Part shown: in pieces, positions 600-64,000 of the stretch | Numbering within the stretch: position 1 is the stretch's first letter | Layout: the number at the start of each line of letters is the position of its first letter | Translations under genes and position numbers: made by a program | The notes under the pieces: generated by a model | Told to the model about the DNA's origin: nothing | What the model saw: the letters and a program-made list of their open reading frames with translations, nothing else | The model's database searches: none | From: Lytechinus pictus | Taxonomy: Eukaryota | Reading direction: 5' to 3' | NCBI RefSeq assembly: GCF_037042905.1 | Contig: NC_087250.1 | Coordinates: forward strand, 1,984,001-2,048,000 | Length of the DNA stretch: 64,000 bases

Positions 600-1033
600 T
601 CCAGTCGTAAGATATTTAGCAGATCGTTAAAATTAATGCTACTGGAAGAATATAATTAATTTGGGATGGTAAAATACTGCCTGAAAACAAATAATTCTAT
701 ATAAAGATTTTGTGAATAATTAAGATATTTTTTTCTTGTAAATAGTGTAAATATGTTCACTTAAAATTATCGAAATTTTCTGCAACATTAATAACTAGAA
801 TTAGTATTGAATTTGATGTACAATATTGAGATTTAGTTACATGTAGATTTATTGTTTAAACTACATGTATGATAATGATATTATTTGGGGCTAACCTCGA
901 TTAGCATCTTGCTATTATGTTAGCTCCAATTACCAAATGTTTTGTTTATACATGTATGTGATGTACTATTCCTTGTAATTGTACCTAACAGTGATATTTG
1001 GTAATAAATTCAATTCAATTCAATTCAATTCAA
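600..1033 (+). mobile_element. Probable 5'-truncated non-LTR retroelement 3' end inserted in the 49-bp array
   Basis: AT-rich segment with hairpin GGGGCTAAC...GTTAGCTCC (~887-928), then AATAAA and an (ATTCA)n tail; interrupts array copies. Confidence 0.5.
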
Positions 1034-5370: not shown

Positions 5371-5471
5371 GGTGGAAGGTGTCGCTGCTTCCCCCCTCCA
5401 TCTCACCCAATCAAAATCATCTCCATTAGAGTTCACCCATCCACACCAGCTGCTTTCGAAATCACAGTCAA
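5334..5471 (-). CDS. MAM O exon 1 (last exon in window)
   Basis: [45 protein letters not shown]; 138 nt, phase 1-1; donor GCAG|gtaagt. Confidence 0.9.
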
Positions 5472-29400: not shown

Positions 29401-32400
29401 AATTAACTGGTACAGAAGCTTTCCTTGTCACTCCTGGGCAGTCTGTATAGTCGGGTTTGTCTCTAGTACACAAAGCTATCCATTTCTTGTCTCCATTGCG
29501 TGGTGTCCACAGACAGATTTGACTGAATTACATGAACCTATCCATAAAGACTACCAGCTCATAAAAACCCTTTCCATTGTTTCTGTTTGGGGGGAATATT
29601 CAGCGTAGAAAGATATCCTTTGGGGATAACCTTTACAGACAGGTTCCTCTTGGGAAGTCGTTCTAGACAGGTTTCACAGTATGCTAAATATCAAAACTTA
29701 CATCATCAACCTGATTAAAATTAACAGGTACCGAAGCTTGCTTCCATTCGGTAGATGACTGACTTTGCTGGCCCTCCAGCATCCAAACCAGGTCCCGATT
29801 GGCTAGGTCTGAGGCTTGGGACGTATAGACCAGGAGCTGACCCATGTTCATACCGTACATCATGTACCAGAACTGAAGACATTTAACTCCAGTCAGTGAC
29901 GGGGCACCAAGCATTAGGTGTGCCTGAAGACCGATGGCAGCAGGAATTAAAGAGTCGACTAAAAGGTAGTGGCCTGCATGGAACAATGTATCAATGATCA
30001 TCAATATCACCACCATGTCAGCAGTACATGTAGGCATGATCTTCACTTTTAGTATTATCAATGGATAAAAGATGTTGAGAAAAATTCAGAGTAGGGTCTT
30101 GATATTGACTTCAAATATCAAATTGTTTCTTTTGGAATATCTTTGGGAAATAATTAATCAAACAGGTTTATAATTTATAAGCACTGATTCAAGTTAGTAA
30201 ACAAACTTAAAGGTAAAATAAAATGAAATAATATACACATGAATAAATTTAAATAAACAGTTATCACTGAAACATCAAATTGTTAACACTATTTTTTCCT
30301 GATCATCATCTTCGTGGGAATTATAAATGAACAGCCAAATCTCAATATGGCATTCAGAATTAATAACAATTATTGAAGTAGTGATATTCCTCTATCCTGT
30401 GATATTCCTCTATCCTTATAATGAAATAAGTGCACTTATCTTTCACTAAACTTGCTACCAATATTGCAGTCATCATCATGAATGTCACCACTACCAACAT
30501 TATTATAATCATCATCACTACCATCACCAACCTCCTCCTCCTCATCATTATCATTTTTCCCACCACCATCATCACAGCTACCAACACCATCACTATCATC
30601 ATCATCATTTTTACCACCACTATCATCACTGCTACCAACACCATCACTATCATCATTATCATTTTTACCACCACCATCATCACTGCTACCAACACCATCA
30701 CTATCATCATCATCATTTTTACCACCACTATCATCACTGCTACCAACACCATCACTATCATCATCATCATTTTTACCACCACCATCATCACTGCTACCAA
30801 CACCATCACTATCATCATCATCATTTTTATCACCACCATCATCACTGCTACCAACACAATCACTATCATCATCATCATTTTTACCACCACTATCATCACT
30901 GCTACCAACACCAACACTATCACCATCATCATTTTTACCACCACCATCATCACTGCTACCAACACAATCACTATCATCATCATCATTTTTACCACCACCA
31001 TCATCACTGCTACCAACACCATCACTATCACCATCATCATTTTTATCACCACCATCATCACTGCTACCAACACCATCACTATCATCATCATCATCATTTT
31101 TATCACCACCATCATCACTGCTATCAACACCATCACTATCACCATCATCATTTTTACCACCACCATCATCACTGCTACCAACACCATCACTATCATCATC
31201 ATCATTTTTATCACCACCATCATCACTGCTACCAACACCATCACTATCATCATCATCATTTTTACCACCACCATCATCACTGCTACCAACACAATCACTA
31301 TCATCATCATCATTTTTACCACCACAACCATCATCACTGCTACCGACACCATCACTATCACCATCATCATTTTTACCACCACCATCATCACTGCTACCAA
31401 CACAATCACTATCATCATCATCATTTTTACCACCACCATCATCACTGCTACCAACACCATCACTATCACCATCATCATTTTTATCACCACCATCATCACT
31501 GCTACCAACACCATCACTATCACCATCATCATTTTTACCACCACCATTATCACTGCTACCAACACCGACACCATCATCATTTTTACCACCACCATCATCA
31601 CTGCTACCAACACCATCACTATCACCATCATCATTTTTACCACCACCATCATCACTGCTACCAACACCATCACTATCATCATCATCATTTTTACCACCAC
31701 CATCATCACCGCTACCAACACCGACACCATCACTATCATCATCATCTTGTAGAGGTATTACCTGCTTCTCCTAGAGTGTGGTCAACGGTTGGACCTGACT
31801 GACCAGCAGAGCCCTGCTGTGTTATCCAATCTAGATCATCTCTATCAATATTCACCCATGGACAGCTTCCACTTTCAAAATCACAATCACCTACAGATTC
31901 AGAATAGAGATTGACACCACATATTAAAGGTGATTTTGCTTCAATATAATGTTCTTGATAAAAATACACATGCATCCTCATATATGCTCATGGTCAAACT
32001 GTATGCCTTCAAAATGCCAGATAAATAATACACTATATAATGTGGCACACCAAATTTCTAACATTCTCAAATAATTAATGACCTCTCTTAATTCTGATCT
32101 TTGACCTTGCGACCTTAGCATCTAATTGGATCATCACTTACAAATGCACAAATGAAACTGGTTTAAAGTCCACCACTAAAATGGTTCTTTCGTTATTGCA
32201 AGGAATATGTTATTTGAGTTGCACTTAAATGCAATCCTTTCTGGAATGAGGAAATTTACCCTTTTTTTAGTTTACTTTAGACCGACAGCAACATGAAATA
32301 TTCAGGGTCTTTTTTTCTGGGGGGGGGGTCTCAAAGTGATTTTTTTTATTCACAAAACTAGTCATTTAAAGTAATTTAAAGTAAGTTATGTGGGTTTTAC

Positions 32401-38400: not shown

Positions 38401-41400
38401 AGGATGCCCTGCTCTTAATTTACCATGGCTTGAATGAAGAGATCATGAAATGAAGTCAATATGGACCAGACATGTGAAGACTCCCATGTCATGCACTCTT
38501 CCATCAAAATCTCATTCTAATGCCTGTATCACAGTTTTTCCTAATATACATTATATGCAATGCCCGGTAATCTCATGCCAAATGACAGTACGCTACCAAC
38601 AATCTCATGCCTTACTTGTCTTTCAACTTGGCATCTCTAACAGAGAAGTAAATTGGGGTTGGGCATCAAAGGGTTGAATATTTTCTGACATTGCCCAATA
38701 GTGAGTTCAAAGTATAAATCCTGGCATAACCCTTGTTTTCTTAGAAAAACAAATAAATCAACCTACCCCATTAACCCTAAAAAGACTGGGGGGCTGATTC
38801 AGCCCCCCCCCCTCGACATTTTTCGCGATAAATATGTAATGCGAAAAGCTGGCGCCGCGCCGTTCCATGACTATTTTTTTTCAAGTCTTGCGCAACTTTT
38901 GAGACCAAATTTGCGACGCCCGGGTACGTGGTTCCGAAATTACGCATTGTAAGTGCATGTCGACCCGAAATTGCTCAAAAACGTGAATTTGAGTACAAAT
39001 CCAATGCAAATTGTGTTTTTAGCCAAAATTCATAAATGTATCATTATTTTCAATTTTACTAATCAAACTCAATTAATTTCATCTTGTTTGTGGTCAAAAT
39101 AAAGTAGGGGACGATTTCCATTGAAAAAAAATAAAAAACAAAAAGTCAAAAAACATAGAAATACATAAGAAATTTAAAAAAAAATGAAATACATAAGAAA
39201 AGAATTGTGATATTGAATTTATTTTAAAGTACATTTGATCAGAATCCCTCAAAGAGTCTGTGAATAAAAAATTAGCAGTTTAGAGGCCTTATTTAGTTAA
39301 CTAGAGCAAATCTTTGATTTTACGCATAAATTAGCATAATTAATGAATTATGAGATTTTTCTGAAAATTTGATCCTACAGTCTTGGAGATTATGCCATGG
39401 GTAATACACGTGCCAATTTTCGTCACGATCGCGCAGTCGACGGCCGAGATCATAGGGGGGGCTGAATCAGCCCCCCCCCCCAGTCTTCTTAGGCATCGAA
39501 ATAGCCCAGTCTATTTAGGGTTAACTGTGTGTAAATGTTCCAATAACATATCTAATACAAAAAAATCCTGAAAATAGTAAAATTCCATTTCAATTCATTA
39601 TTTCTTTGTTAAACTTTCCTACCAAGATTGTATAAACTTTGCCAAGGCAGTGGTAAAAAGTATGATGAACAATATTGGAATGTAGGAACTTCCATGTGGG
39701 ACACCATATCTTATCATCTCCTCTTGTGTGATCATATGATGGACCTGATAAGAATGATAAACAATACTGGAGAGTAGGAACTTCCCTGTGGAACGCCATA
39801 TCTTACCATCTCCTCTTGTGTGATCATATGATGGGCCTGTGCCAGACGTTGAGGTTGAGCCCTGTCCTCTTCTCCAGTCAAAATCATCATCAGTGGACTG
39901 GACAAAGTCACATGTATCGCTTTCAAAGTCACAGCTTTGCGTCCCAGATGCTACAATGAAATAAAACAAAAGTCTGAAGGATTGTTGCAAAGTTCAAGTG
40001 TAATCAAATGTTCCCCAAATCAAATATAATAGGACATTGCAAGAGAGTTGAGAATTATGGTGGAGTAAAAATCAATTGAAGTACTTGCTTTTGATGTAAG
40101 TAATAAAAGTTTCTTGCTAAAAGTTGCTATGTCCCCATAAGTGTTGGGCATCTTAAAATTCAAAATAATTTCAAAGCAGCTTTTCTCTCCCAAATTGGTC
40201 AACCCGAGGATTAAAAGGGGAGACACACACTGAATAGGATGTCTGCTAAAAACTGGGCAGAAAGGGGATCAGATTTGAGTTGATGCACCAGAAACATGCA
40301 CTCTGTATTCACATTTCAATGAACCAACCTATTTTGTTTTGTATACCAAATAAAACTTCAACATTATTTGGTGTCTTAAACTCAGCGTCCTATATCAAGG
40401 CATTCTTCAGCATTCAATTTCAACGAGTGAATTCACATTGTCATTCCATGAAGTAATTGGGTTTCAAAGTCTCGCTGAAATGCTTAGTTTGGTGACGGAG
40501 GTAATATATATGTAAAGCATATACTAGTCCAATCTATTAGGTACTAAGTAAACACAGAGTATTCTCAGTATGGTGGTACAGTTGTATAAAATCCAATAAG
40601 ATGTACAGTTTTTACAACTTTGAAGCATATGATTATTATTTCAAATAGATTTCTCTTACTTAATCTTTGCAATGTGCAATATCGTTTTTTTTCATAAAAA
40701 GCCGGATAACGCAGCAAACATATAATAGTCATGTCATGATAAAGGCACCATGTCATGTGTGTTGTATATGAATGTTTACTTACGTGGTGGAGAAGTTGGA
40801 GGTGCTGGCGTTGTAGTTGGAACAACAGCTGCTTCTGGAGGATAGGCTAAAAATTTATCAAATAAAAAAACATTTGATATGATCACTGAAGGCATACACA
40901 TTAGTGTGACATCACATATGAACTTAATTTCTCAGTGTCTAATGTTACTGCTCAATGCAAAGAAATATTCATGTTTCATCACTTGTTGGAAAGTATTTTA
41001 TTTTATTACAGTGGATATCTGCACAATACAAATACAGATGACACAACATTTGCTCCTGCAACAATTGCTCTGGGCTTAATTTTTAAGATGTATGATTAGG
41101 ATTAGGGTTGCATTAAGGTTATGTTAGGTTTAGGGTTAGGTTTATTAGGGTAGGGTCTAGTGTTAAAACCAAGGTTGAAGGTCATTTGATTAGTATGTGG
41201 TATTTAGGGTGGAGCAATTGTTGTCGGAGCAAATGCCATGGAACACAAATACATGTATGAAATGCATGTATTCATTATCAATATTTTTTTCTCTTTTTTG
41301 CTTATAAATACTGGCCATTTTCATATAAGCATTTCACTATGTTTTCTTGAGCTGCTTGATTTTAATAGGTTTGCAATAAACATCATTGGCCCCAATGACA

Positions 41401-44775: not shown

Positions 44776-44809
<34 letters not shown>

Positions 44810-47800
44810 GTCTGTTATTTTTATCTTATAGTGCCTTAACCATACCAACCTGTATCTGAGAGTGTTGTGTGATCATTTAGAGGACCAGTTTGTGGTGTAG
44901 TACAGTACTACCAGATTGTCTTTGTCAGTCAAGTTGATCTCTACCGTCAGCAGCATTAGCATTTTCCTTCTATCACCCCTCCCTCTCTCTCTCTCTGTCT
45001 GTTATTTTTATCTTATAGTGCCTTAACCATACCAACCTGTATCTGAGAGTGTTGTGTGATCATTTAGAGGACCAGTTTGTGGTGTAGTAGTACTTCCTGA
45101 TTGTCTTTGCCAGTCAAGTTGATCTCTACCGTTGGCAGCATTAACCCACCCACAGAAATCAGACTCAAAATCACAATCCTCTGAAATATAATAAAAAAAT
45201 AAATATCATAATGTTGGCAAGGCACCGTGAAAAGAGTCAGAGCTACATCTTTCAGGCAGGTTTCTACAAATATTAAGTCATCACTAAAATTCAACATGGC
45301 ATAGGAAAGGTGAATGCAGGAAAAGTAACTGTTAAAGAAACAAACTTCACATTGCACATTTATAGCAAGACGTACTGCCAAGGGAAGTTGAACAGAATTT
45401 TGTAAACTTACCCACTAATTAAGTTAAGAGGTACAAATGTTAATCATGCCTTTTTCTAAATAGGCACAACTATTAAGATCATATATTTTCATGGTATGAT
45501 GAATAATGTATAAATCATCTTCACAACAGTCTATTCCATAAACTGCACTATTTTGTTCAAACAAACCTGTTTTTCACATAATTCATGAGCAACATAAAAA
45601 TCCCAAACACAAAGGAAAGCTTGTTCAAGTGGGAGTAAGATCCAATAAACTTTTTTGATTAAGGGATGGACAAGAGGCCATAACAGATATTTGAATTTAA
45701 TAAAAGGATCAACACAAGCTTTCGGCCATAATGTACAAACAAATTTGTGGAATATGTATATATATATATATATATATATAGATATATAAACTTTGTTGGA
45801 ACTATAACGCATTACCTCTTTGTCTCTTTTATCTCATCTGTGTCCAACACACGGAATGTAATATCGTTATATATATTATCTACATATATATATGCAAGAG
45901 GTTGGAGAATGTTACCCCAACATACAATATATGAGCATTATCCACTCCACATAGCAATCATAATTTAATATCGATCCTAGAATAGAATTCAATTTCACAA
46001 TCAAGAAAGTTGTTTCATTCAGAAGGTTCAGCTAGTCCCTCCAACATAAAGCTTATCAATTAATCATGGACTCCCTTGCATTGACACATACATGCAATGT
46101 ATTGTTAAAATGAATATGTGCAATCGATTGCTATTTTTGTGATACTGGCCCCTGAAATGATTTCCCCAGACTGCAAAAGAAACAAAAAGGAAACGTACCA
46201 CAACTTGTTCTTGTCATTGTTATCTCATCAATCGCTATATCTCTCTGGAGACCACTGCCGAGTAATCCATCAAACACCAGATCATATTCTGGTAGACTGA
46301 TTTGAACAGCGCCCTCGTGCCATTTGTTCCCTTGATCATATAGATGATTTGTGAGGAATTCGTACCTGTTATTACCATAGAGGGCCTACAGCAATACACA
46401 TCGAAGATGTACAAAAAAGATTTGATTTTATTGATTTGATTTATTGATTTCCGTTTCACAATTGTACATAATTATAATATAACATAACAAGGTCGAAAAT
46501 ACTGCAAGACATAATAAAATATATATAACATAATCTTAGATTTAAGGAACACAATTCAATAAATAAAGTTACCTAAGATGACATTTGTATTTAAAAGTAA
46601 AATGGAGGGTCTTGCCGAAAAAAGGCAAAGCTTGTACAAAAGGCAAGCCCCTAACTTAGTTTCATTACAAAATTACAACAAAAAAATATTGGGTCGCAAT
46701 GATATATAGAACTTTTGTTTAAAAATAAATACAAACAATTTATGTGTACTTTACAAAAAAAGTAACTGATTGATCGTGTGAGAAATATTTTGTTTTATAA
46801 CATTAGGGAGAGAGGGGGGAGGTGAGGTGGAGAAGAGAGGAGGGACAGAAAAGTGCAGTGTACATTACGTAGAAAGAACGCTATAAGATATAATATGATA
46901 TTATAAGGAAATGAAATATGATAACAATAATTTTTTTTTTTTTTTTATTCCAGAGAAGAAAAAAAACTTTGTCATTATATGTCTGTATATAGCCATATTA
47001 TTTGGTATCCACAAAGTAAAATTCATAAATATTATTCTTATACTTCATACTGTCTAATTTCGAAATATTAAAATAAAAATAAAAATTAATTTTTTTTTTA
47101 CACCAGACTTCTTGTCAGTCCCACATTTTATGCTTGAGTGAACCTCAAACTTCCATCATTGTTTTCTCATTACTCTTGGAAGCTCTCACTGAATAAATTA
47201 CTTGTATGGCTTAGTTGATAACATTTGACAAGTTATTTATCATTTTAAAGCTTGGGATGTTCTTTTTCACGCTCTATTAATTTCTTTAAAAAATCTTTTT
47301 GGGTGATTTGTTAGTTTTGAGTTTGCAGGTCACAAATTGAATCAAGTTTCATGCTCACCCCTAATTCTAAAACATAGACATCATCTCCATACATATGATA
47401 GTTATATCTCCAGCAATGGACCTCATCTGGGTTATTAATGGAGATGTGTGGTGATATTAATCTAGCTCTATTGGATGCGGTTCCCTCCGATCCAATGTAC
47501 AGATAATGCCCTGTGGATGAAACACATAACATTTTATCTCAACTTTAAATTAAGATTTTATCAATAATAACGTGAACATGTGTAATGCGCCGGTATCAGT
47601 CTTAAAAAGATGATAAAGGCACAACAAAGAAAAGAAAAGAAAAGAAGAAGAAAATAAAAATAAAAACTAAAAAGAGGGAACAACAGTAATTACTTGTTCA
47701 GTTCACAGCCCACTTGATACTCAAATCATTTAAATCTGCCTGGAAATAATAACTTGAATAGTTTGCCTCACCATTGATAGATTAGGAATTATCACAACAA

Positions 47801-56800: not shown

Positions 56801-59800
56801 TGTACAAAGTGAAAAACAGATTTACTTACGTTCACCATACATGTGATACCAGAATTGAAAACAGCCACCCTGGGTAGGAGGTTGTGGTTCACTGACAAAC
56901 CATGCTCTACGACCCTCAGCCTCGAAGCCTACAGGGAACAGCATGTACCATCCTATATACACACAAAGAATGAAACAGACAAAGAACAATATAAATCATA
57001 TCAATTAAGACATATGACAAACAATTTTTGTTGAGGGCGTTGCATGGTTCAAAGTCTTATTCGCCATAAGGCCAAGGTTTTAATACCACAGCAGCACTTG
57101 CAAATCATGTTGCCAACACAAAATTTGGATATCAGTAAAAATTTATGTTATTTATGCGTTTTCTTAGCTAATTAATCTCGTTAAATCTACCAATTTTATT
57201 TTAATAATTTAGTCATGCTAATTTATGCATGTATTTAGAATTGGGTGTTAACCTGTAGCCCCTGAAGTAAATGCTTCTATCTAGAGACCCTTTTATGGAA
57301 TTTCTATCAAATATACATTAAACATAATTGTTGGAATTAAAATTTGCCACATTGCCTAATTCACCTTTAATAAAGACGAAAATACAATTACAACAACGTG
57401 ATTGAATCAATATACCTTGGTATCTTCCGGTGGTATGGTCCACATCTGGTCCTGTGTTACTGGTATCAGTACCTCCTTGGTTTCTATACCAATTCAAATC
57501 ATCACCACCGTACACATTATCCCATAGACACGTATCATCTTCAAAGTCACAGAAACCTTCAGGGAAAAAAGAAAAGAAAAAAAATATACACATAAACTAA
57601 ACATACCATCCCCTCAGTGGTTTCCTAATTCTAAATAAAACTTTATTTATTCAAAAATAAAATACTGGTTTCATTTATTTGTTTTGTTTCGTTTATATAT
57701 CATGAATTTTTTCTCTCTGCATGTTTGTTCACAATACATGTATATGATTGCAGTCAATATCTAAAGGGGAGTTCTTGCGATGGGATAAAAAAAATCCTTC
57801 AAAATTTTATACACATTTAGATGTATCAACTCTACTTCACTACTGTTTCTTTAAATATCATACATAGTATATGCCTGAAAACTTTTGAGATTCTGGACTA
57901 TAAGATTCATATTGGGCATAATATGCCTATGTTCAAACTCAACTATCTTTCAATGTGAATGTGAACAGTATTGGTTTCCCTAAAATAACATCATTAATTC
58001 CTTACATTGGCAATGCTAGGAACATCACCGTTAACAAATGCATACTGGCCCATGTTAAGTGTTTAACTCCAAAAATGCTCCCTAACCAATGTTTATTTGT
58101 ATCTGATACATGAGTCATAAACTGTAAAATGAAAAATGCCGCCAAGAAACTAAAACTGGAGCAAATAAAACAACAAATGCTAAGTTAAGACTGTGTTTTT
58201 CAGAATGTTAAAAAAGTGTTAAAAATATTTGCTGGGAAGCATTTCATGACAATAAATATTCAATAATCTTCACTCACTGATTATTATAGGCAACTGAAAG
58301 CCTAGCATCTGATTGGATAAGGGCGCAATAGTCAGTGAAAACCATTGACTAAATGCTCCCACTTTGACCTACCTTGTGCCACGCATGGCCCTATTTCTAG
58401 ATTGATATCATCAATTGCAATTTCTCCATCTTCACCATCTAAAGTGGGTCCAATCACAGCCTCAAAAGCAACCTGAAAATCAGAAGAAAATCAGAAATTT
58501 ATGATTTTATTAACAAATAAAATATACTGTTGGCAATCTCACCTTCAATTACAAAGGTCAATCAAGCAGCTGTCACTTTGGTACATTGATCAAACAATTG
58601 ATGATTTTATCACTTATTATTGATCAATGCAACAATCATTATTAACTAATGTAATTCTTCTGGCAGTTTCATCTGCATTACAAAATTCCATGAACACAAG
58701 ATTGTTCACTTAGTAACATTGATCAAGTATTATTAATTTTTTTCTTTCTCATTTACTCTTTGAATATGTAATTTGATCATCCAAGACCAACCAGGGTGAA
58801 ACAAAATCGGAATTCATTACAATGTCAAGATTGCTCATCTCTTATACTGAAAGGAGCAGACTTTCATGTCACTCTCTCACCACTTGAGTTCAAACTGATG
58901 AAAGTCATATTATTATTATTATCATACCAGGACCATCTAGCTGCTGAAGAGCATTATTTTTCAAGGGACAAGATTACTCAACTTTTACCAAGAGAGTAGA
59001 ACAAGCCTTCAGTGTCATTGGATGATTTCAAGTTTTGTGTTGGCGTTGGTACAATGTTAGTGTTGGTTTTAGGAGTAAAAGTTGGATTGTGTTTTCAATT
59101 AACACCCCTTGTGAGTAAATAAAAATGATCAAACTCCCATCACTGATAGTTCTATGCATTTTGAGATATGTTTCATGACCAGTGACATATTAAGTTTGGT
59201 GCTATGCTGCATAAAAAGTGTCTTGAAACCAAAAGGTCAACATAAAACAACACACCCTCTACTAATGCACTCCACATCATCGGCCTGGGATCATCCTGGA
59301 ACTGCTGAAGAGGATTATTTGTCAAGGTACAAGATTACTTGATTCTTACCTTGAATGTTGAAGTAGCCTTCAGTGTGACCCTATCCATCATCCAATCATT
59401 GAAGAGTCCACCAGGTTGTGTCTCCCAGTACGGTCCTATCAAGGTATTACCATCATGTTCCTAAACCTTCAGAGTTCTCAATCCTTTATGGTGATACCAG
59501 AAAGTCTTACCTTGAAAGAAGAAGTAGCCTTCAGTGTGACCCTATCAATCATCCAATCATTGAAGAGTCCACCAGGTTGTGTCTCCCAGTACGGTCCTAT
59601 CAAGGTATTACCAACACGCTCCCAGACCCTCAGAGTACTCAATCCTTTATGGTGATACCAGAAAGTCTTACCTTGAAAGAAGAAGTAGCCTTCAGTGTGA
59701 CCCTATCCATCATCCAATCATTGAAGAGTCCACCAGGTTGTGTCTCCCAGTACGGTCCTATCAAGGTATTACCAACACGCTCCCAGACCCTGAGAGTACT

Positions 59801-62800
59801 CAATCCTTTATGGTGATACCAGAAAGTCTTACCTTGAATGTTGAAGTAGCCTTCAGTGTGACCCTATCCATCATCCAATCATTGAAGAGTCCACCAGGTT
59901 GTGTCTCCCAGTATGGTCCTATCAAGGTATTACCAACACGCTCCCAGACCCTGAGAGTGCTCAATTCTTTATGGTGATACCAGAAAGTCTTACCTTGAAA
60001 GAAGAAGTAGCCTTCAGTGTGACCCTATCCATCATCCAATCATTGAAGAGTCCACCAGGTTGTGTCTCCCAGTACGGTCCTATCAAGGTATTACCAACAC
60101 GTTCCCACACCCTGAGAGTGCTCAATCCTTTATGATGATACCAGAAAGTCATACAGTCACCCTCAGACGTTGCGGGGATATCTTTGGAGTACAGGATTGC
60201 TCGATCTTCTTCACTAACCATCTCAGAGTGGTTTGCATAGATGAAGTAACCTTTGAATGGTAGAAATGCAATGTTTTGATGATCATTGCTAGGTAGGTTG
60301 GCAACGTACTCAAAAAGCAATTGATTATCAGTGCATATTTTTATTATAAATGCTTTTGAGGCATATTCATTAAATTAGCACATCAATGATATGGTTCTCA
60401 TCCAGCAACCAGCGAGCAAACCTAAGAAAAGTTTACTTTCAACCAAGTATGGTTTATTCACTGATCCTAGCAGGCAATAGGGTGAACTAGATTCAGTTTA
60501 AAAATATAAAAATTGGAATTTAGAAGGTAATACATTTAACATACTGGTTCATGACTTTTAACTAAGCCATGACATACCACAAATACATTTATAATGGTCG
60601 AATATGTTCAAGATCACAACTAAAATTCTAATATTACACACTATACATTGATATGACAAAGAGAGTACAGATAATGGGAGGAAAAAGGGAGGACAAAATG
60701 GAGGACAAAATGTAAAATTGCAAAACATAAACATTTTTTTTCCATTGCATCAATTGTAACCACTGTAGATTAGTATTTTGTGTTAATCGTCTTTTTGTGA
60801 GTTTGTTTTATCTTCTGTTCGTGTTGTAGTGGTGTTTTTTATGTCATACTTTTGGTTATGTTAATACATTAAAATGTCATATTTTTGGGGTTGCGCTATA
60901 CCCCGGTTATGCCGCCAGGACGACAGTGAACCGACAGGTATTACCGTACCTCTTTTTCTTTTTCGGTTTAATGGATCGTCCTGTCGGCAGGACTAGGGTA
61001 CAAGTTATTTGTAAATTATTCTGAGTACACAGTTTTTTTTAGGATATGTTGTATGTACTTATACACAGTTTGTATCAATGTTCTGTTTGATTGAAGTGCA
61101 ACCATATGTTTTGTATACTTTGATTGTTTTTGTGACGAATAAAAACTGCAAAGATAAAAAAAAAAATGGAGGACAAGATAAGAGACTTCTGAGACGGTGG
61201 CTCACCATTAGGTGTTCCAAGGCTGTGATCAGGAAGATTCATTCCCGGTCGAGGATAGTCAAACCCTGTACCTCTTGACCAATCAAAATCATCTAGGACA
61301 GTCTCCTGCATCCAACCGCACATATCATAACGGAAGTCACATTTCCCTTCAGATTGAACAAAAGAAAAAGTATTTAACTATCACAAATACATAATGAAAA
61401 CTTATTTAATCTCTCATTTACAGTTTAATATTGTGTTTATTCAGGAGAATTCAAATTCTATCCTTGTTTTATTTTCCTTGAAGCGCCATGAGCACCGAAA
61501 GGTGGACCTCTGCACTATATAAGTAGCCACCATTATTATTATTATTTATAATTACTAGTCATTTAGAACAGTTTCATGTATAAAACCACACATGTTATTT
61601 TGAAAGTTAAATTCCCAATGAGATTGAACGATGGGGATTCTGACATTGCAATGCATAATGAATTTGATACAACTTTATTATGTGTGGGCGCGTCTTGGTT
61701 TAGTGGTTCTGACTCTCCCCTTTAAAACAGAGGGTCATGGGTTTAAATCCTAGCCGTGGCGTGTTTTCCTTCAGCAACAAATTTATCCACATTGTGCTGC
61801 ACTCGACCCAGCAGAGGTGAATGGGTACCCGGCAGGATTATTTCCTTGAATGCACTGAGCGCCGGTGATGGCAGCTCGAGCTAAAGCCGGGGTAATAATA
61901 GCAGTGCTTTGTATCCTAAGGCAAAAAGCGCTTTTTAAATCCAGCTAGTATTATTATTACTATTGAGATGAAAAAAATTAGGAAAAGAATAACCACACAT
62001 TAATAATCACACATTAATAACCAAACATAACAGAGAAAGATAAGTCCGGGATATAAATTATTATTTTCAATGCAGGACAGTAGTATAATATAATTTTTTT
62101 TACCCATATTTTATATAAATGTGATAAGGCTTACTTGTTGCTGGGCAGGGTCCAAGGTAGGCTGTGATATCATCGATTGCCATGTCACTGAAAATATTAT
62201 CACCAATCGTCCCTTCTATTTGGAACTAAGACAAAACAAGAGAAAAACATACATAAACTCTGAGATTTTAACATTATTCTCAGATCAGTCAAGATATTGC
62301 CACATATTGCTCCTTCTGTTTAAATCAATACTCGACAAATCACCAAGCAAACAGTGAGAAATTGTGAAACACCACATCATTTACAACTGAAAATATGCTT
62401 CAAAAGTTACTCAAAAATATGAAAGAATTTGAACAATTTTCATTCTAGTTTATTGTTATTCTATCACAAAAATAGGATAATCATATCAAAACAGGAGCAT
62501 AAAATTTGTAAAAGTTCAAATTATTTGCTCCTTATTCATAATGGTGTGGATGCCTACAGATTAACAGGGAGGGGGGTTATGCTGTTTCATATTTGCAAGA
62601 GAAAACAAGAAATAAATGTAGCATTCAAGGGGTTTCAAGAACAAAAATTAAAAGAGCCAAGAGGGAAATGTCCTACCCTGTAAATAATATTAGCATAAAA
62701 AAATATTGAAAATAAGCTAAAAGTAATGTCATGTAAATTATAGTACCTCAAAAAGATCCTTAGGTGGGTAAAAGTCAATGTTTGCAATCTGCCAGAAATC

Positions 62801-63844
62801 TCCTGTATTCCCTTCTCTCATCCACAATGTCCCTCCATCTGAATTGTCATTCTCACCCCTCCATTTGATTTTGAGTGAGCCCATATTCTCCCCATTCAGG
62901 TTATACCACATCTGGAGGCATATGACGGGTTCGGTCCTTCCATCTTGCACGGGGGAGATCAACCTTGCACTTTCATAGTAATGATTCCCAGACTGGGTAT
63001 ACAAGTAGTATCCTGTATATTCAATAAGGTCAAAGGTCAACTTGGTTAATAAGTCTGAGAATGAATCACTTACAAGATGTTCCATGAAACTTTGTTTTCC
63101 TAACGAGGGGGCCTGAAACACAAAGCTTAGCAATGATCGTAAAACATTGTTCTACAATTAATTGCATGTACCACAATGAATTATCAATCGTGAAAATCAA
63201 GCGTATGATTAATACCTCACCTTTGTGCTACGAGACCCTGGTGGGTGTTTCCTAAAGCTTTTCATAAAGTTATGCATGCACCCTCTCTGCACCAGATATC
63301 ATATTTTCATAGGTGCTATGTCAGCTATATATGTAGCAATATATCTCTTCGTACAAGAAGGGTCTCCAAACATGCTTAACTTAATACAGAGGTGTGAGTG
63401 GTCACAAATATAACGATCTGGAAAAAGCCAAAGAGTATTGAGAAAGTTTAAAATAGAAAGAGCTCCCATACTTTTTTTTACAGAGGAGAGCCAAAAATAA
63501 GCTGAAATTAAACTGAAAATAAAAATTAAAAAAATTTTAAATCAGCTAAAACTCTTGAACTGTCACACCCCAGTTGATAACAACTTCATGAAACAGCCAA
63601 TTTGTATGTCAAATGAATGAGAAAGAAGAGAGAGAGAGAGAGAATGAAAACATGGAAATAACTTATTTACCCGTTCCACTGGTATGATCTTGACTAGGAC
63701 CTGTTCCCCAACCACTGTCACCTGATCGACCACGCCTCCAATCAAAGTCATCTGATTGGTCATCAGTCCATGAACATATGTCATCCTCAAAGTCACATGA
63801 CAGGGGTTTGAATGTGTAGTCAGGTGATGCCTCAGGTGGATAGA
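5334..63844 (-). CDS. Multi-exon gene (partial; 46 exons in window) encoding a very long tandem MAM-domain protein, MALRD1/apical endosomal glycoprotein-like; 14 complete MAM domains (A-N) plus start of a 15th (O)
   Basis: Repeated MAM motifs CDFE..C.W...DD.DW...G.T..TGP..DHT / G.Y.Y...ARL.SP...C..FWYHM.G..G.L / W...G..W...FEG..G...DIAIDD...G.C. All exons bounded by AG and GT (one GC) with matching phases; summed length 7185 nt, open throughout. Confidence 0.93.
6299..6412 (-). CDS. MAM N exon 4
   Basis: [38 protein letters not shown]; 114 nt, phase 1-1. Confidence 0.88.
7017..7258. mobile_element. Small inverted-repeat element (MITE-like)
   Basis: CATTGGGTGATTTCAAGTTCAGTGTTG ... CAACACCGGACTTGAAATCACCCAGTG; related left end at ~59015. 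Confidence 0.6.
7683..7755 (-). CDS. MAM N exon 3
   Basis: [24 protein letters not shown]; 73 nt, phase 0-1; tctctgtag| and G|gtaaga; not in the ORF track. Confidence 0.85.
7801..8240. mobile_element. Truncated TTAA-target non-autonomous element (Kolobok-like)
   Basis: Starts TTAA|AGGGGAATCCAACCC and resembles the other TTAA|AGG elements; no right TIR seen. Confidence 0.5.
8465..9025. mobile_element. piggyBac-type MITE
   Basis: TTAA|CCCTTTGAACCC ... GGGTTCAAAGGG|TTAA; non-coding. Confidence 0.85.
9292..9435 (+). mobile_element. tRNA-derived SINE (truncated)
   Basis: A-box TGGCTCAGTTGG and B-box GAGTTCAAGCC; body matches the minus-strand copy at 35225-35405. Confidence 0.75.
9522..9676 (-). 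CDS. MAM N exon 2
   Basis: [24 protein letters not shown]...[19 protein letters not shown]; 155 nt, phase 1-0. Confidence 0.9.
10110..10259 (-). CDS. MAM N exon 1
   Basis: [49 protein letters not shown]; 150 nt, phase 1-1. Confidence 0.9.
10771..12519 (-). mobile_element. Tc1-family (IR/DR type) DNA transposon, defective
   Basis: TA|CAGTTAACAACAGAATTATTCATACCCC ... GGGGTATGAATAATTCTGTTGTTAACTG|TA; ~220-bp TIRs with an inner repeat of AATTATTCATACCC. Confidence 0.95.
11228..12103 (-). pseudogene. Tc1 DD34E transposase pseudogene
   Basis: MAKTKE start; [38 protein letters not shown] (second catalytic D changed to N), [12 protein letters not shown]; frameshifts and stops. Confidence 0.9.
12588..12669 (-). 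CDS. MAM M exon 3
   Basis: [27 protein letters not shown]; 82 nt, phase 0-1. Confidence 0.9.
12722..13205. mobile_element. Non-autonomous element, possibly Helentron/HINE-like
   Basis: Subterminal IR GTCTCGCCTGCA ... TGCAGGCAAGAC followed by an A-run; two internal ~180-bp direct repeats (GACC...TTGGTTAAGATTTC). Confidence 0.45.
13572..13846 (-). CDS. MAM M exon 2
   Basis: [12 protein letters not shown]...RLISP...[18 protein letters not shown]...ESFR; 275 nt, phase 1-0. Confidence 0.9.
14554..14697 (-). CDS. MAM M exon 1
   Basis: [47 protein letters not shown]; 144 nt, phase 1-1. Confidence 0.9.
15165..15386 (-). CDS. MAM L exon 3
   Basis: [12 protein letters not shown]...[11 protein letters not shown]...[17 protein letters not shown]; 222 nt, phase 1-1. 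Confidence 0.9.
17253..17833. mobile_element. TTAA-target MITE (Kolobok-like) with long internal palindrome
   Basis: TTAA|AGGAGAATGAAAC ... GTTTCATTCTCCT|TTAA; internal arms inverted; ends 20 nt from the donor of exon 17854-17973. Confidence 0.85.
17854..17973 (-). CDS. MAM L exon 2
   Basis: [40 protein letters not shown]; 120 nt, phase 1-1. Confidence 0.9.
18401..18541 (-). CDS. MAM L exon 1
   Basis: [47 protein letters not shown]; 141 nt, phase 1-1. Confidence 0.9.
18586..19160. mobile_element. TTAA-target MITE (Kolobok-like)
   Basis: TTAA|AGGACAAGTCCACCCCA ... TGGGGTGGACTTGACCT|TTAA; same family at 35990-36574 and a fragment at ~50410-50570. Confidence 0.85.
19675..20135. mobile_element. 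MITE with G/C-run termini
   Basis: GGGGGGGCACTCA ... TGAGTGCCCCCCC inverted ends; GC-richer non-coding interior. Confidence 0.6.
20390..20480 (-). CDS. MAM K exon 3
   Basis: [30 protein letters not shown]; 91 nt, phase 0-1. Confidence 0.88.
20766..21031 (-). CDS. MAM K exon 2
   Basis: GYLIYANQG...[12 protein letters not shown]...[12 protein letters not shown]...KSQFQ; 266 nt, phase 1-0. Confidence 0.9.
22319..22453 (-). CDS. MAM K exon 1
   Basis: [44 protein letters not shown]; 135 nt, phase 1-1. Confidence 0.88.
22842..22932 (-). CDS. MAM J exon 3
   Basis: [30 protein letters not shown]; 91 nt, phase 0-1. Confidence 0.9.
23404..23601. repeat. Intronic 49-bp tandem repeat, 4 copies
   Basis: GAGATTATAATATCAGTGATAGCTGATGAATTTGAAGAAATACTGAAGA x4; unrelated to the exon-derived 49-mer. 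Confidence 0.9.
23815..24416. mobile_element. Degenerate piggyBac-type MITE related to 38775-39520
   Basis: Shares CTTGCGCA...TTTTGAGACCAAATT...ATTACGCA core with 38775-39520; ends ...AGG|TTAA. Confidence 0.6.
24585..24862 (-). CDS. MAM J exon 2
   Basis: [22 protein letters not shown]...[16 protein letters not shown]...GFYR; 278 nt, phase 1-0. Confidence 0.9.
25490..26185. repeat. ~210-bp intronic direct duplication separated by a tRNA-derived SINE (~25730-25937, minus strand)
   Basis: CAGTAAGTCATTGATCATCAGGTAGACTGTCATTAGT... at ~25518 and ~25988. Confidence 0.8.
26213..26451. mobile_element. TA-target Tc1/mariner-type MITE
   Basis: TA|CACAGCAAAAACTGTGGTGTTAA ... TTAACACCACAGTTTTTACAGTG|TA. 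Confidence 0.85.
26482..26655 (-). CDS. MAM J exon 1 (linker + N-terminal part)
   Basis: [38 protein letters not shown]...[11 protein letters not shown]; 174 nt, phase 1-1. Confidence 0.88.
27505..27770 (+). mobile_element. tRNA-derived SINE
   Basis: AAACAGAGGGTCGTGG..TC(G/A)AATCC.AGCCATGGCG...GCAAGAAATTTATCC...TGCTGCACT...AATGGGTACC...GCCGGGGTAATAAT core shared with other copies. Confidence 0.8.
28195..28490 (-). mobile_element. tRNA-derived SINE (same family), near full length
   Basis: Reverse complement of the 34444-34736 copy; B-box GGTTCGAATCC; (TTA)n tail. Confidence 0.85.
28579..28663 (-). CDS. MAM I exon 3
   Basis: [28 protein letters not shown]; 85 nt, phase 0-1. Confidence 0.87.
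28960..29225 (-). mobile_element. L2/CR1-group LINE 3' fragment
   Basis: Minus strand reads [34 protein letters not shown], a typical ORF2 C-terminus. Confidence 0.8.
29702..29973 (-). CDS. MAM I exon 2
   Basis: [11 protein letters not shown]...[16 protein letters not shown]...VWMLEGQQ...VDD; 272 nt, phase 1-0. Confidence 0.9.
30480..31745. repeat. Intronic ~54-bp (ATC/ACC-rich) minisatellite, ~22 copies
   Basis: Unit ATCACTGCTACCAACACCATCACTATCATCATCATCATTTTTACCACCACCATC; begins 16 nt from the donor at 31762. Confidence 0.93.
31762..31890 (-). CDS. MAM I exon 1
   Basis: [43 protein letters not shown]; 129 nt, phase 1-1. Confidence 0.9.
32405..32600 (-). CDS. MAM H exon 3 (ends at a GC donor)
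   Basis: [65 protein letters not shown]; 196 nt, phase 0-1; donor CTAG|gcaagt. Confidence 0.87.
32870..33440. repeat. Degenerate CA-rich tandem repeat next to the donor at 33477
   Basis: Recurrent CACTATGACAGT.CAATAACACACACTCAC / CACTAAAATA units. Confidence 0.8.
33477..33640 (-). CDS. MAM H exon 2
   Basis: [21 protein letters not shown]...[22 protein letters not shown]; 164 nt, phase 1-0. Confidence 0.9.
34444..34736 (+). mobile_element. tRNA-derived SINE, near full length
   Basis: A-box GTGGCCCAGTAG, B-box GGTTCGAATCC, conserved core, (TAT)n tail. Confidence 0.85.
34923..35069 (-). CDS. MAM H exon 1
   Basis: [48 protein letters not shown]; 147 nt, phase 1-1. Confidence 0.9.
35225..35405 (-). 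mobile_element. tRNA-derived SINE (family of 9292-9435)
   Basis: Minus strand TGGCTCAGTTGGTAGAGC...GGGTTCAAACC...CAGATCAAAAGACGTTAAA. Confidence 0.8.
35990..36574. mobile_element. Kolobok-like MITE (family of 18586-19160)
   Basis: AGGTCAAGTCTACCCCA ... TGGGGTGGAGTTTTCC-TTAA; interior homologous to 18586-19160. Confidence 0.8.
36588..36672 (-). CDS. MAM G exon 3
   Basis: [28 protein letters not shown]; 85 nt, phase 0-1. Confidence 0.9.
37245..37492 (-). CDS. MAM G exon 2
   Basis: [23 protein letters not shown]...[19 protein letters not shown]...ANYK; 248 nt, phase 1-0. Confidence 0.9.
38775..39520. mobile_element. piggyBac-type MITE
   Basis: TTAA|CCCTAAAAAGACTGGG ... CCCAGTCTATTTAGGG|TTAA; subterminal palindromes GGGGCTGATTCAGCCCC. 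Confidence 0.88.
39655..39839 (-). repeat. 92-bp tandem duplication spanning the donor of exon 39807-39950
   Basis: [10 protein letters not shown] codons + ~60 nt of intron repeated; donor mutated GT to AT in the intronic copy; third copy at 38266-38360. Confidence 0.9.
39807..39950 (-). CDS. MAM G exon 1
   Basis: [47 protein letters not shown]; 144 nt, phase 1-1. Confidence 0.9.
40784..40846 (-). CDS. Pro/Thr-rich inter-domain linker exon
   Basis: [20 protein letters not shown]; 63 nt, phase 1-1; ttttag| and |gtaagt; shares YPPEA with the linker in exon 63671-63844. Confidence 0.85.
41665..41749 (-). CDS. MAM F exon 4
   Basis: [28 protein letters not shown]; 85 nt, phase 0-1. Confidence 0.87.
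42815..42929 (-). CDS. MAM F exon 3
   Basis: [38 protein letters not shown]; 115 nt, phase 2-0. Confidence 0.87.
43988..44141 (-). CDS. MAM F exon 2
   Basis: [22 protein letters not shown]...[19 protein letters not shown]; 154 nt, phase 1-2. Confidence 0.9.
44642..45141 (-). repeat. ~187-207-bp tandem triplication spanning the donor of exon 45037-45180
   Basis: Last ~105 nt of the exon + intron start (including a CT microsatellite) repeated; copies carry TGG to TGA and an insertion. Confidence 0.92.
45037..45180 (-). CDS. MAM F exon 1
   Basis: [47 protein letters not shown]; 144 nt, phase 1-1. Confidence 0.9.
46199..46385 (-). CDS. MAM E exon 3
   Basis: [62 protein letters not shown]; 187 nt, phase 0-1. 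Confidence 0.88.
47359..47510 (-). CDS. MAM E exon 2
   Basis: [22 protein letters not shown]...[19 protein letters not shown]; 152 nt, phase 1-0. Confidence 0.9.
48007..48156 (-). CDS. MAM E exon 1
   Basis: [49 protein letters not shown]; 150 nt, phase 1-1. Confidence 0.9.
48663..48747 (-). CDS. MAM D exon 3
   Basis: [28 protein letters not shown]; 85 nt, phase 0-1. Confidence 0.9.
49448..49700 (+). mobile_element. Degenerate tRNA-derived SINE
   Basis: GTGGTTTAGTGGTTAGAGCATTGGACTC...GTTCAGATCCC tRNA-like head. Confidence 0.55.
49844..50109 (-). CDS. MAM D exon 2
   Basis: [22 protein letters not shown]...[10 protein letters not shown]...VPYQ; 266 nt, phase 1-0. Confidence 0.9.
50877..51026 (-). 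CDS. MAM D exon 1
   Basis: [27 protein letters not shown]...IDHTLGDGT; 150 nt, phase 1-1. Confidence 0.9.
51097..51545 (+). mobile_element. RTE-clade LINE 3' fragment
   Basis: Degenerate RWYGHVLRR...[10 protein letters not shown] motif; short (GTAATGAT)n-like tail. Confidence 0.75.
52190..52411 (-). CDS. MAM C exon 3
   Basis: [30 protein letters not shown]...[27 protein letters not shown]; 222 nt, phase 1-1. Confidence 0.9.
52722..52809 (-). repeat. Partial duplicate of the 3' end and donor of exon 56830-56952
   Basis: [25 protein letters not shown]|gtaagtaaatct versus exon [25 protein letters not shown]|gtaagtaaatct. Confidence 0.92.
52867..56802. mobile_element. 3.9-kb non-autonomous TIR transposon (TA target, Tc1/mariner-like ends)
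   Basis: TA|CAGTGCCGGCCGCAGGAAACGTCAC ... GTGACGTTTCCCGCGGCCGGCACTG|TA (25 bp, 1 mismatch); subterminal CCCTAGG and GCGCCCGC motifs; no transposase ORF. Confidence 0.88.
56830..56952 (-). CDS. MAM C exon 2
   Basis: [41 protein letters not shown]; 123 nt, phase 1-1; not in the ORF track. Confidence 0.9.
57416..57556 (-). CDS. MAM C exon 1
   Basis: [47 protein letters not shown]; 141 nt, phase 1-1. Confidence 0.9.
58373..58472 (-). CDS. MAM B exon 3
   Basis: [33 protein letters not shown]; 100 nt, phase 0-1. Confidence 0.9.
59345..60150 (-). repeat. 161-bp tandem repeat x5 spanning the donor of exon 59994-60250
   Basis: AAG|GTAAG junctions at 59994, 59833, 59672, 59511 and 59350; older degenerate junction copy at ~58925-59020. 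Confidence 0.96.
59994..60250 (-). CDS. MAM B exon 2
   Basis: GYFIYANHS...[31 protein letters not shown]...KATSSFK; 257 nt, phase 1-0; donor AAG|gtaag. Confidence 0.9.
61206..61346 (-). CDS. MAM B exon 1
   Basis: [27 protein letters not shown]...PDHSLGTPN; 141 nt, phase 1-1. Confidence 0.88.
61685..61963 (+). mobile_element. tRNA-derived SINE (family of 34444-34736)
   Basis: Same core and (TAT)n tail. Confidence 0.83.
62135..62225 (-). CDS. MAM A exon 3
   Basis: [30 protein letters not shown]; 91 nt, phase 0-1. Confidence 0.9.
62747..63012 (-). CDS. MAM A exon 2
   Basis: [21 protein letters not shown]...[16 protein letters not shown]...DLFE; 266 nt, phase 1-0. Confidence 0.9.
63671..63844 (-). 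CDS. MAM A exon 1 (linker + N-terminal part)
   Basis: [57 protein letters not shown]; catag| acceptor, |gtaaa donor; 174 nt, phase 1-1. Confidence 0.9.
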
Positions 63845-64000
63845 CTATGAATAATCAATGGACAAAGTCACATGACAGGGGTTTGAATGTGTAGTCAGGT
63901 GATGCCTCAGGTGGATAGACTATGAATAATCAATGGACAAAGTCACATGACAGGGGTTTGAATGTGTAGTCAGGTGATGCCTCAGGTGGATAGACTATGA
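63788..64000 (-). repeat. 75-bp tandem repeat (>=3 copies, runs off window) spanning the acceptor of exon 63671-63844
   Basis: CATAG|TCTATCCACCTGAG... junctions at 63844, 63919 and 63994; copies identical. Confidence 0.95.

What the first reader, a model, noticed from the sequence alone, without database searches (positions are those of the whole stretch)
59345..60150. Intronic 161-bp copies differ from the exon mainly at synonymous sites: a possible archive of exon alleles
Seen: relative to the exon, the copies carry CAT>CAC, AGC>AGT, CTC>CTG, GTG>GTC, GAA>GAG, CCG>CCA and TCT>TCA (all synonymous, most shared between copies). Two end types occur: KATSSFK at 59994, 59672 and 59511; KATSTFK at 59833 and 59350. 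Other non-synonymous changes (GGA>GAA, ATG>ATT, a TAG in the distal copy) are private to single copies. Neutral intronic decay should not prefer third positions. Inference: these variants arose while the sequence was coding, so the array was fed from different exon alleles by unequal exchange or conversion, and could feed variants back into the exon.
Basis: partly seen in the sequence, partly recalled or inferred. Interest (0 to 1): 0.78.

Follow-up and report, generated by a model that had tools for sequence, protein, structure and literature searches.

The report
Exon-end copies repeated inside an intron
The last 154 bases of a sea-urchin MAM-domain exon plus its splice signal are repeated five times in a row; this is a known kind of repeat, and the mostly silent differences between the copies are real but modest and best explained by ordinary reshuffling between gene variants, not by a purposeful store of variants.

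Summary
The array is real: 5 × 161 bp at 59344-60154. It lies on the minus strand of a multi-MAM-domain gene. Each unit holds the last ~154 nt of exon 59994-60250 plus the donor AAG|GTAAGA. RNA-derived contigs from two runs splice from the first donor (59994) to 58472, so four units are intronic. Reading on past the first donor meets a stop after 11 codons.

The formal count is 15 variable sites (codon positions 1/2/3 = 1/5/9, p = 0.03), or at least 17 events (9 silent, 8 not; p = 0.003-0.015). Three silent sites separate only the exon from the copies. Without them the excess is not significant.

The third-position bias recurs in three other boundary-spanning arrays of this window (1/0/8, p about 0.001-0.008). 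The exon unit also looks chimeric: its four differences from unit 3 all lie in its first third.

This is a "mirage" minisatellite, known from amphioxus and human F7. This scan has already found many on other DNA of the same genome. Exchange with exon alleles by unequal crossover is plausible. An "archive" function is not supported: the copies carry a stop, and indels in other individuals. Interest is low to moderate.

The parts
59994..60250 (-). Middle exon of one MAM domain, 257 nt, starting in phase 1 and ending in phase 0. Its last 154-155 nt form unit 1 of the array.
   Evidence: Pfam MAM, E = 3e-9. RNA-like contigs of runs X5 and X8 join 61204>60250 and 59994>58472 with GT..AG ends on the minus strand. 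Translation.
59994..60154 (-). Unit 1, the expressed copy. It ends KATSSFK and is followed by the donor that is actually used, AAG|GTAAGA.
59833..59993 (-). Unit 2, intronic. It starts with the used donor GTAAGAC. Private changes are GGA>GAA and CCG>CCA (a CpG site). End type STFK (TCA ACA). Identical pseudo-donor.
59672..59832 (-). Unit 3, intronic. It differs from the exon unit only at columns 20, 35, 47 and 53, all silent third positions. End type SSFK.
59511..59671 (-). Unit 4, intronic. It carries CTC>CTG and a private ATG>ATT. End type SSFK.
59350..59510 (-). Unit 5, the distal intronic unit. It has a cluster of seven changes in columns 35-58 (59453-59476), including TGG>TAG. End type STFK. 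Its donor copy is AAG|GTAAGAATC.
   Evidence: No other source for the changed patch exists in the window.
58473..59993 (-). The intron, 1521 nt. Its first 644 nt are units 2-5.
   Evidence: Joint 'skips 1521, CT..AC' in two runs.
58373..58472 (-). Next exon, the end of the same MAM domain (VAFEAVIG...IAIDDI...C). The acceptor is confirmed by RNA. The 3' end is inferred from G|GTAGGT.
58941..59015 (-). Older relic copy, 81% identical to 59302-59376, made of the last ~27 nt of the exon plus ~48 nt of the following intron. It reads TCT ACT where the units read TCT TCT or TCA ACA.

Best explanation
This is a 'mirage' minisatellite, a tandem duplication that straddles an exon-intron boundary.

Shown:
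- A 161-bp segment, made of the last ~154 nt of a MAM-domain exon plus the first ~7 nt of the intron with its GTAAGA donor, has been amplified to five units.
- The first unit is the real exon end, and its donor is the one spliced.
- The other four units lie in the intron and are removed with it. Using any of their donors would add 161 nt per unit and run into a stop.

Inferred:
- The array turns over like any minisatellite, by unequal crossover or conversion between misaligned units. In this very polymorphic species that often happens between different haplotypes.
- Such exchanges move exon-allele sequence into the intronic slots and replace the 3' part of the exon unit with array sequence.
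- Purifying selection acts only on whatever sits in the exon slot.
- Together with silent substitutions fixed on the exon lineage itself, this leaves differences between units enriched at third codon positions. Private changes acquired in the intron (missense, stop, indels) look neutral.
- The array has no role as a store of alleles. It is a tolerated by-product and, if anything, a mutational hazard for the exon.
For: - Structure.
- MAM exon.
- First donor used in RNA-like contigs of two runs, with no joint from any other donor reported.
- All five donors are identical, and reading through gives a stop after 5-11 codons.
- Silent or third-position excess in this array.
- Replication in three other boundary-spanning arrays of the window, at 1033-5370, 39658-39839 and 44792-45143.
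- Exon-versus-unit-3 differences confined to the 5' third (about (45/153)^4 = 0.0075), and four-gamete incompatibilities among columns 41, 53 and 152-155.
- Exon contigs of other individuals differ from the window by 2.3-3.2% (14 of 326 letters in the one that also covers 66 nt of intron). The three shown sites are all silent third positions, so exon alleles differ about as much as unit 1 differs from unit 3.
- Units in other individuals carry deletions of 8 and 12 nt, consistent with neutral decay in the intron.
- In the 49-bp array an exon-type unit sits at intronic position 3, which shows that exon-type sequence does get copied into such arrays.
- The class and its concerted evolution are described for amphioxus (PMC3087553). 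Use of the first donor is described for human F7 (PMC1557585).
Against: - Numbers are small. The excess in this array alone loses significance once the three sites private to the exon are set aside.
- The direction of the silent changes could not be established, because no sister-species DNA was readable.
- The pooling of arrays was decided after seeing the data.
- In the 187-bp array the intronic half of the unit shows no substitutions while the exonic half shows five. A pure allele-capture model does not predict this.
- Several third-position changes are not silent (ATG>ATT, AGC>AGA, TGG>TGA, TAC>TAA), so selection cannot be the whole story.
- Short-read contigs cannot give copy number or unit order in other individuals.
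Confidence: 0.55

Rival explanations
1. The duplication is simple, with no later exchange. The array arose once or in a few steps. The exon then accumulated only silent changes under purifying selection while the copies decayed neutrally. The rest of the third-position excess is chance.
For: Columns 20, 47 and 53 separate essentially only the exon from the copies. Without them the silent excess is not significant. Private changes in units 2, 4 and 5 look neutral.
Against: Under this model only about 37% of exon-versus-copy differences should be silent. Units 1 and 3 differ at 4 of 4 silent sites (p about 0.02). The bias also recurs in three other arrays even against the 0.44 null (p = 0.008). 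The model does not explain the 5' clustering of the exon's differences or the four-gamete incompatibilities.
Confidence: 0.33
2. The array is a functional archive. The intronic copies are kept as a reservoir that is copied into the exon to diversify the protein, like pseudogene donor arrays in antigen or immunoglobulin diversification.
For: There are two end types (SSFK and STFK), and the units have mosaic relationships.
Against: Nearly all shared variants are silent, so transferring them would not diversify the protein. The copies carry a stop and missense changes, and indels in other individuals. Dozens of unrelated housekeeping genes in this genome carry the same kind of array. The exon polymorphisms shown for other individuals are not stored in the array.
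Confidence: 0.03
3. The units are alternative exon ends, used through alternative or mutually exclusive splicing.
For: All five donors are identical. A weak donor (AGG|GTGACT) upstream of the repeat, joined to the pyrimidine-rich AAG at a unit's end, would stay in frame. This is my reading of the sequence and is not supported by RNA.
Against: 161 is not a multiple of 3. Using a later donor reads into a stop within 11 codons. The hypothetical in-frame route would remove the conserved cysteine of the MAM motif. RNA-like contigs of two runs show only the collinear exon with the first donor.
Confidence: 0.03
4. The array is an assembly artefact: a collapsed or expanded repeat, or a mix of two haplotypes.
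For: The species is highly heterozygous. Contigs of other runs are short and show different junctions.
Against: Independent runs hold a unit-to-unit junction (X2, 59594-59774) and unit-to-intron junctions (X1, X2), so an array exists in other individuals too. The five units are individually distinguishable.
Confidence: 0.04

Closest known systems
'Mirage' minisatellites of amphioxus (Adh3; globin genes BflGb6 and BflGb9), as described in PMC3087553
   Same: They are tandem duplications that span an exon-intron boundary. Their units are 150-160 bp long and occur in 3-6 copies, and the copies carry splice signals. Regular splicing is not disturbed. Copy number differs between haplotypes, the units evolve in concert, and the boundary units are excluded from homogenisation.
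   Different: The phylum is different (an echinoderm, according to earlier scan notes). Codon-position bias among the copies was not described in what I read of that paper (a term search for 'mirage' and 'minisatellite'). Here the bias is present and recurs in several arrays of one gene.
Human F7 intron 7 37-bp VNTR (PMC1557585)
   Same: The first repeat element spans the exon-intron boundary, so the true donor is followed by identical pseudo-donors that stay silent. The most upstream donor is chosen.
   Different: The F7 unit is 37 bp with little exon sequence. Here 154 of the 161 bp are coding sequence, which is why codon-position analysis is possible. No splicing experiments exist for this locus.
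Other boundary-spanning arrays in the same genome, noted earlier in this scan (VPS13, BRCA2, GRB14, FARP, DDX19, Vps34; also the 88-copy array at 1033-5370 of this window)
   Same: The construction is the same and the genuine splice site is used. The FARP case was also reported with a modest excess of silent differences.
   Different: Those are unchecked AI notes on other DNA. Only the arrays inside this window were re-measured here.
Pseudogene donor arrays for templated diversification (for example chicken immunoglobulin pseudo-V genes), from general knowledge
   Same: Silent partial copies lie next to an expressed copy, with possible conversion between them.
   Different: Those arrays store amino-acid diversity and transfer is directed. 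Here the shared variants are silent, the copies decay, and no directionality is seen.

Membership tests
Mirage (exon-intron boundary-spanning) minisatellite | Head-to-tail tandem repeat of minisatellite size | tested here: met
   Period 161, 5.0 copies, 95% matches, no indels. Gap-free alignment.
Mirage (exon-intron boundary-spanning) minisatellite | The unit contains an exon end together with its splice site, and one terminal unit is the real exon boundary | tested here: met
   The RNA joint 59994>58472 coincides with the end of unit 1. Every unit ends in AAG|GTAAGA.
Mirage (exon-intron boundary-spanning) minisatellite | The authentic site is used and the repeated sites stay silent | tested here: met
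   Only the first-donor joint is reported, in the RNA-like contigs of runs X5 and X8. Contigs drop rare forms, and products of later donors would be targets of nonsense-mediated decay, so low-level use is not excluded.
Mirage (exon-intron boundary-spanning) minisatellite | Length or structure polymorphism between haplotypes, with concerted evolution | tested here: inconclusive
   Other individuals show a terminal junction 12 nt shorter and an internal unit with an 8-nt deletion. Short contigs cannot count the units. The mosaic relationships among units fit concerted evolution.
Mutually exclusive or alternative exon array | Each copy has its own acceptor and donor and keeps the reading frame | tested here: not met
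   161 nt is not a multiple of 3. Reading through gives a stop within 11 codons. Unit 5 has an internal TAG.
Templated diversification archive (donor pseudogene array) | Stored copies differ from the expressed copy at amino-acid level, and those variants appear in expressed alleles | tested here: not met
   The shared variants are silent except for S/T at one residue. The exon variants shown for other individuals (60051, 60087, 60099) are not in the array. The variant table was truncated, so the reverse check is incomplete.
MAM domain (PF00629) coding exon | Significant match to the Pfam MAM profile | tested here: met
   Exon: 37.4 bits, E = 3e-9, above the cutoff of 26.4. The open frame through an intronic unit matches only weakly at 18.3 bits.

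The most novel reading that the evidence does not exclude
In this highly polymorphic urchin, boundary-spanning arrays are in steady two-way exchange with their coding exon. Selection on the single exon slot then shapes the whole intronic array. The signature is third-position bias, seen in all four informative arrays of this gene. The arrays would be a readable record of past exon alleles and a recurrent source of chimeric exon alleles, and the exchange rate could be measured from population long reads.
Probability: 0.4. Interest if true: 0.5.

Novelty: new member of a known kind. Interest (0 to 1): 0.33.

Why it matters
On its own this is one more tolerated splice-donor minisatellite. Its use is as a natural experiment.
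- It offers five identical donors, of which the cell picks the first.
- Because 154 of the 161 bases are coding sequence, one can ask whether intronic copies evolve independently of the exon or in concert with it.
- If the third-position bias holds genome-wide, it would show that selection on an exon can reach into neighbouring non-coding copies through recombination. It would also give a way to estimate exchange rates in minisatellites.

Tried and rejected
- Word-index protein search with the open frame across the exon. It found one relative, P0001, but its contig's DNA could not be fetched. No nucleotide outgroup was obtained.
- Scan of JGI metagenome contigs for the exon peptide. It found nothing.
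- Read laying. It gave the splice joints and some variants, but its variant table was cut ('114 more not shown').
- Rfam search on 58000-61500. No RNA family matched.
- Plus-strand open frames through the array. No Pfam family matched.
- Search for a donor of unit 5's changed patch. None exists in the window.
- CpG decay as the cause of the bias. It explains the 49-bp array, where all three variable exonic sites are in CpGs. In the 161-bp array it explains only column 80, and it explains none of the 187-bp array's changes.
- A first attempt to cut the 49-bp array with fixed register or fuzzy regex failed. It was replaced by a register-tracking cut.
- The exhaustive representative-protein search was not run.
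Exons were searched one by one by reference.
Full report
**What is there.** Tandem Repeats Finder reports one array at 59344-60154 with period 161, 5.0 copies, 95% matches and no indels. A self-comparison finds only this array plus one older 75-bp match, 59302-59376 against 58941-59015 at 81% identity. The five units align without gaps at 97% mean column identity. The window has no N and is 36% G+C.

**The gene.** Open frames on the minus strand across the whole window carry MAM-domain motifs in a recurring three-exon pattern.
- The frame through the array is a MAM match: the exon scores 37.4 bits, E = 3e-9.
- RNA-like contigs of runs X5 and X8 fix the exon borders. They join 61204 to 60250, and 59994 to 58472, and both skipped stretches have GT..AG ends on the minus strand.
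- The exon is therefore 59994-60250: 257 nt, starting in phase 1 and ending in phase 0, with the last residues ...KATSSFK.
- The next exon starts at 58472 with VAFEAVIG...IAIDDI.
- Unit 1 of the array is the last ~154 nt of this exon. Units 2-5 each begin with GTAAGAC, the start of the intron, and then repeat the exon end.
- All five copies keep the donor AAG|GTAAGA.

**Splicing.**
- Only the first donor is seen joined to the next exon, in both runs.
- Reading past the first donor meets a stop after 11 codons. Each added unit is 161 nt, which is not a multiple of three. Use of a later donor would therefore give a truncated product, probably degraded.
- Contigs drop rare forms, so low-level use is not excluded.
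- Choice of the most upstream of several identical donors is the behaviour shown experimentally for the human F7 intron 7 repeat (PMC1557585).

- All the listed silent changes, both end types and the three listed private changes are present.
- The list omitted four non-synonymous changes of unit 5 (AGC>AGA, AGG>AAG, CGT>CAT, GTT>GAT) and its GTC>GTT.
- These sit with the TAG in a cluster of seven changes within 24 nt (columns 35-58). All seven go to A or T, four of them G>A.
- No other sequence in the window could have donated this patch.

**Formal test in this array.**
- A random mutation of this coding stretch is silent with probability 0.21 with no transition bias, rising to 0.26 at a four-fold bias.
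- The junction column is left out. That leaves 15 variable sites, at codon positions 1/2/3 = 1/5/9 (p = 0.031 against one third).
- At least 17 events are needed, 9 silent and 8 not (p = 0.003-0.015).
- If the two clusters are each counted once, 6 of 10 events are silent (p = 0.008-0.023).
- At three silent sites (columns 20, 47, 53) essentially only the exon differs from the copies.
- These three could be ordinary silent substitutions on the selected exon lineage. Without them the remainder is 6:8 (p = 0.05-0.12), or 3:4 collapsed (p = 0.16-0.26).
- The excess is real but modest, and a trivial cause covers part of it.

**Is the trivial cause enough?**
- Suppose one lineage accepts only silent changes and the other accepts everything. 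Then about 37% of exon-versus-copy differences should be silent, and about 44% should fall at third positions (my calculation from the figures).
- Units 1 and 3 differ at four sites, all silent, which gives 0.37^4, about 0.02.
- I then looked at the other arrays of this window that straddle MAM exon ends:
  - 49 bp × about 88 at 1033-5370
  - 92 bp × 2 at 39658-39839
  - 187 bp × 1.9 at 44792-45143
- Their variable exonic sites fall at positions 1/2/3 = 1/0/8. This gives p = 0.001 against one third and 0.008 against 0.44.
- Pooled with the present array the count is 17 of 24 at third positions (p = 2e-4, or 0.007 against 0.44).
- CpG decay explains the three sites of the 49-bp array, which are all in CpGs. 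It explains only one site of the 161-bp array and none of the 187-bp array.
- Caveats: the pooling was decided after seeing the data, the events are few, and some third-position changes are not silent (ATG>ATT, AGC>AGA, TGG>TGA, TAC>TAA).

**Signs of exchange between exon and array.**
- The four differences between units 1 and 3 all lie in columns 9-53, with none in columns 54-161. The chance of this is about (45/153)^4 = 0.0075.
- Unequal crossover between a misaligned exon unit and an intronic unit replaces the 3' part of the exon unit and leaves its 5' part with its own haplotype. That is the pattern observed.
- The informative columns 41, 53 and 152-155 are pairwise incompatible in a four-gamete test. 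Column 53 in unit 5 may be a parallel change inside its mutation cluster.
- The relic copy at 58941-59015 reads TCT ACT where the units read TCT TCT or TCA ACA.
- Taken as an outgroup, the relic makes the SSFK type one amino-acid change from the ancestor, and the STFK type two silent changes from it.
- In the 49-bp array an exon-type unit sits at intronic position 3.

**Other individuals.**
- Exon contigs of runs X1, X2 and X8 differ from the window at 60051 (X1 only), 60087 and 60099. These are GGA>GGG, ACC>ACT and CGT>CGC, all silent.
- Exon divergence between the window and contigs that lie within the exon is 2.3-3.2% per base (6 of 257, 7 of 218). X1's 326-nt contig, which also covers 66 nt of intron, differs at 14 letters. 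This is about as much as unit 1 differs from unit 3 (4 of 154).
- None of these three exon variants is present in any unit of the array.
- A contig of X2 spans a unit-to-unit junction and has an 8-nt deletion.
- Contigs of X1 and X2 join a unit to the downstream intron with 12 nt missing, which removes that unit's donor.
- So an array exists in other individuals, and its intronic units decay by indels.
- The variant table was truncated. Whether array-type letters occur in other exons remains untested.

**Interpretation.**
- The object is a 'mirage' minisatellite. The class is described in amphioxus, with very similar unit sizes (150-160 bp), copy numbers (3-6), undisturbed splicing, differences between haplotypes and concerted evolution (PMC3087553).
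- Earlier notes of this scan report many such arrays on other DNA of the same genome. They name the genome Lytechinus pictus, which I did not verify. One of those arrays also has a modest silent bias.
- The most likely account of the bias combines two things: silent substitution on the exon lineage, and the ordinary unequal exchange of a minisatellite between divergent haplotypes, with selection acting only on the exon slot.
- It does not support a role as an archive. The shared variants are silent, the copies decay, and the same construction occurs in many unrelated genes.

**Both strands and other features.** Open frames on the plus strand through the array have no Pfam match. No Rfam family reaches its threshold in 58000-61500.

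**A relative.**
- The word-index search found one protein, P0001: 172 aa, 76% identical, from an ENA assembly.
- It is an open frame in which the same exon part is duplicated in frame, with a run of VC residues at the junction that fits a (GT)n tract.
- Its junction differs from the one here, which suggests an independent duplication.
- Such elongated frames are the ones a gene caller would report, so this find is biased towards duplicated loci.
- Its DNA could not be fetched.

**Not done.**
- The exhaustive representative-protein search was left unused.
- A scan of metagenome contigs found nothing.

Noticed in passing
window 1033-5370, 39658-39839, 44792-45143, 59344-60154, 63788-64000: Five of about twelve distinct tandem arrays in this 64-kb window straddle exon-intron boundaries of the MAM gene: four on the donor side and one on the acceptor side. 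This is far more than the small share of the sequence that lies at such boundaries would predict.
   Followed up: partly
window 1062-5370 (minus strand): The 49-bp array has 37 exonic nt plus GTAAGTTTCATT per unit. Among about 88 units the only variable exonic columns are 9, 12 and 36. All three are third positions and all lie in CpGs. TCT is linked with TAA as one unit type. An exon-type unit sits at intronic position 3. Already noted by the scan as s1-313800.
   Followed up: partly
window 44792-45143 (minus strand): In the 187-bp duplication of a MAM first-exon end, the exonic half differs at 5 sites (4 at third positions, including TGG>TGA) plus a 2-nt insertion. The intronic half shows no substitutions, only a change in length of a (GA)n tract. 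This is the opposite of what simple neutral decay predicts.
   Followed up: partly
protein P0001 (ENA ERZ26222911, 21-kb contig): A relative of this exon, 76% identical, also has the same exon part duplicated, here in frame, with a run of VC residues at the junction that fits a (GT)n tract. The same contig holds a 181-aa MAM open frame that may be another such case.
   Followed up: partly
window 59453-59476 (unit 5, columns 35-58): Seven substitutions cluster within 24 nt, all going to A or T, four of them G>A. The remaining 100 nt of the unit match the consensus. This looks like one clustered mutation event. No donor sequence exists in the window.
   Followed up: partly
window about 60725-61272: Contig depth in two DNA runs is 30-100 times that of the flanks (1300-5900 against about 25-80). 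This indicates a high-copy repeat in the intron upstream of the exon.
   Followed up: no
window 11186-11947 (minus strand): Open frames here resemble a Tc1/mariner-type transposase (for example '...[12 protein letters not shown]...'), lying inside an intron of the MAM gene. This was recognised by eye only.
   Followed up: no
window 23404-23600: A 49-bp × 4 array. On the minus strand each unit ends in a pyrimidine tract plus CAG, and the array runs into an open frame. It may be another acceptor-side boundary array, but no domain was recognised.
   Followed up: no
window 30542-31742: A 54-bp × 22 array (18 codons per unit, rich in Asp, Gly, Ser and His when read on the minus strand). Whether it is coding was not examined.
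   Followed up: no
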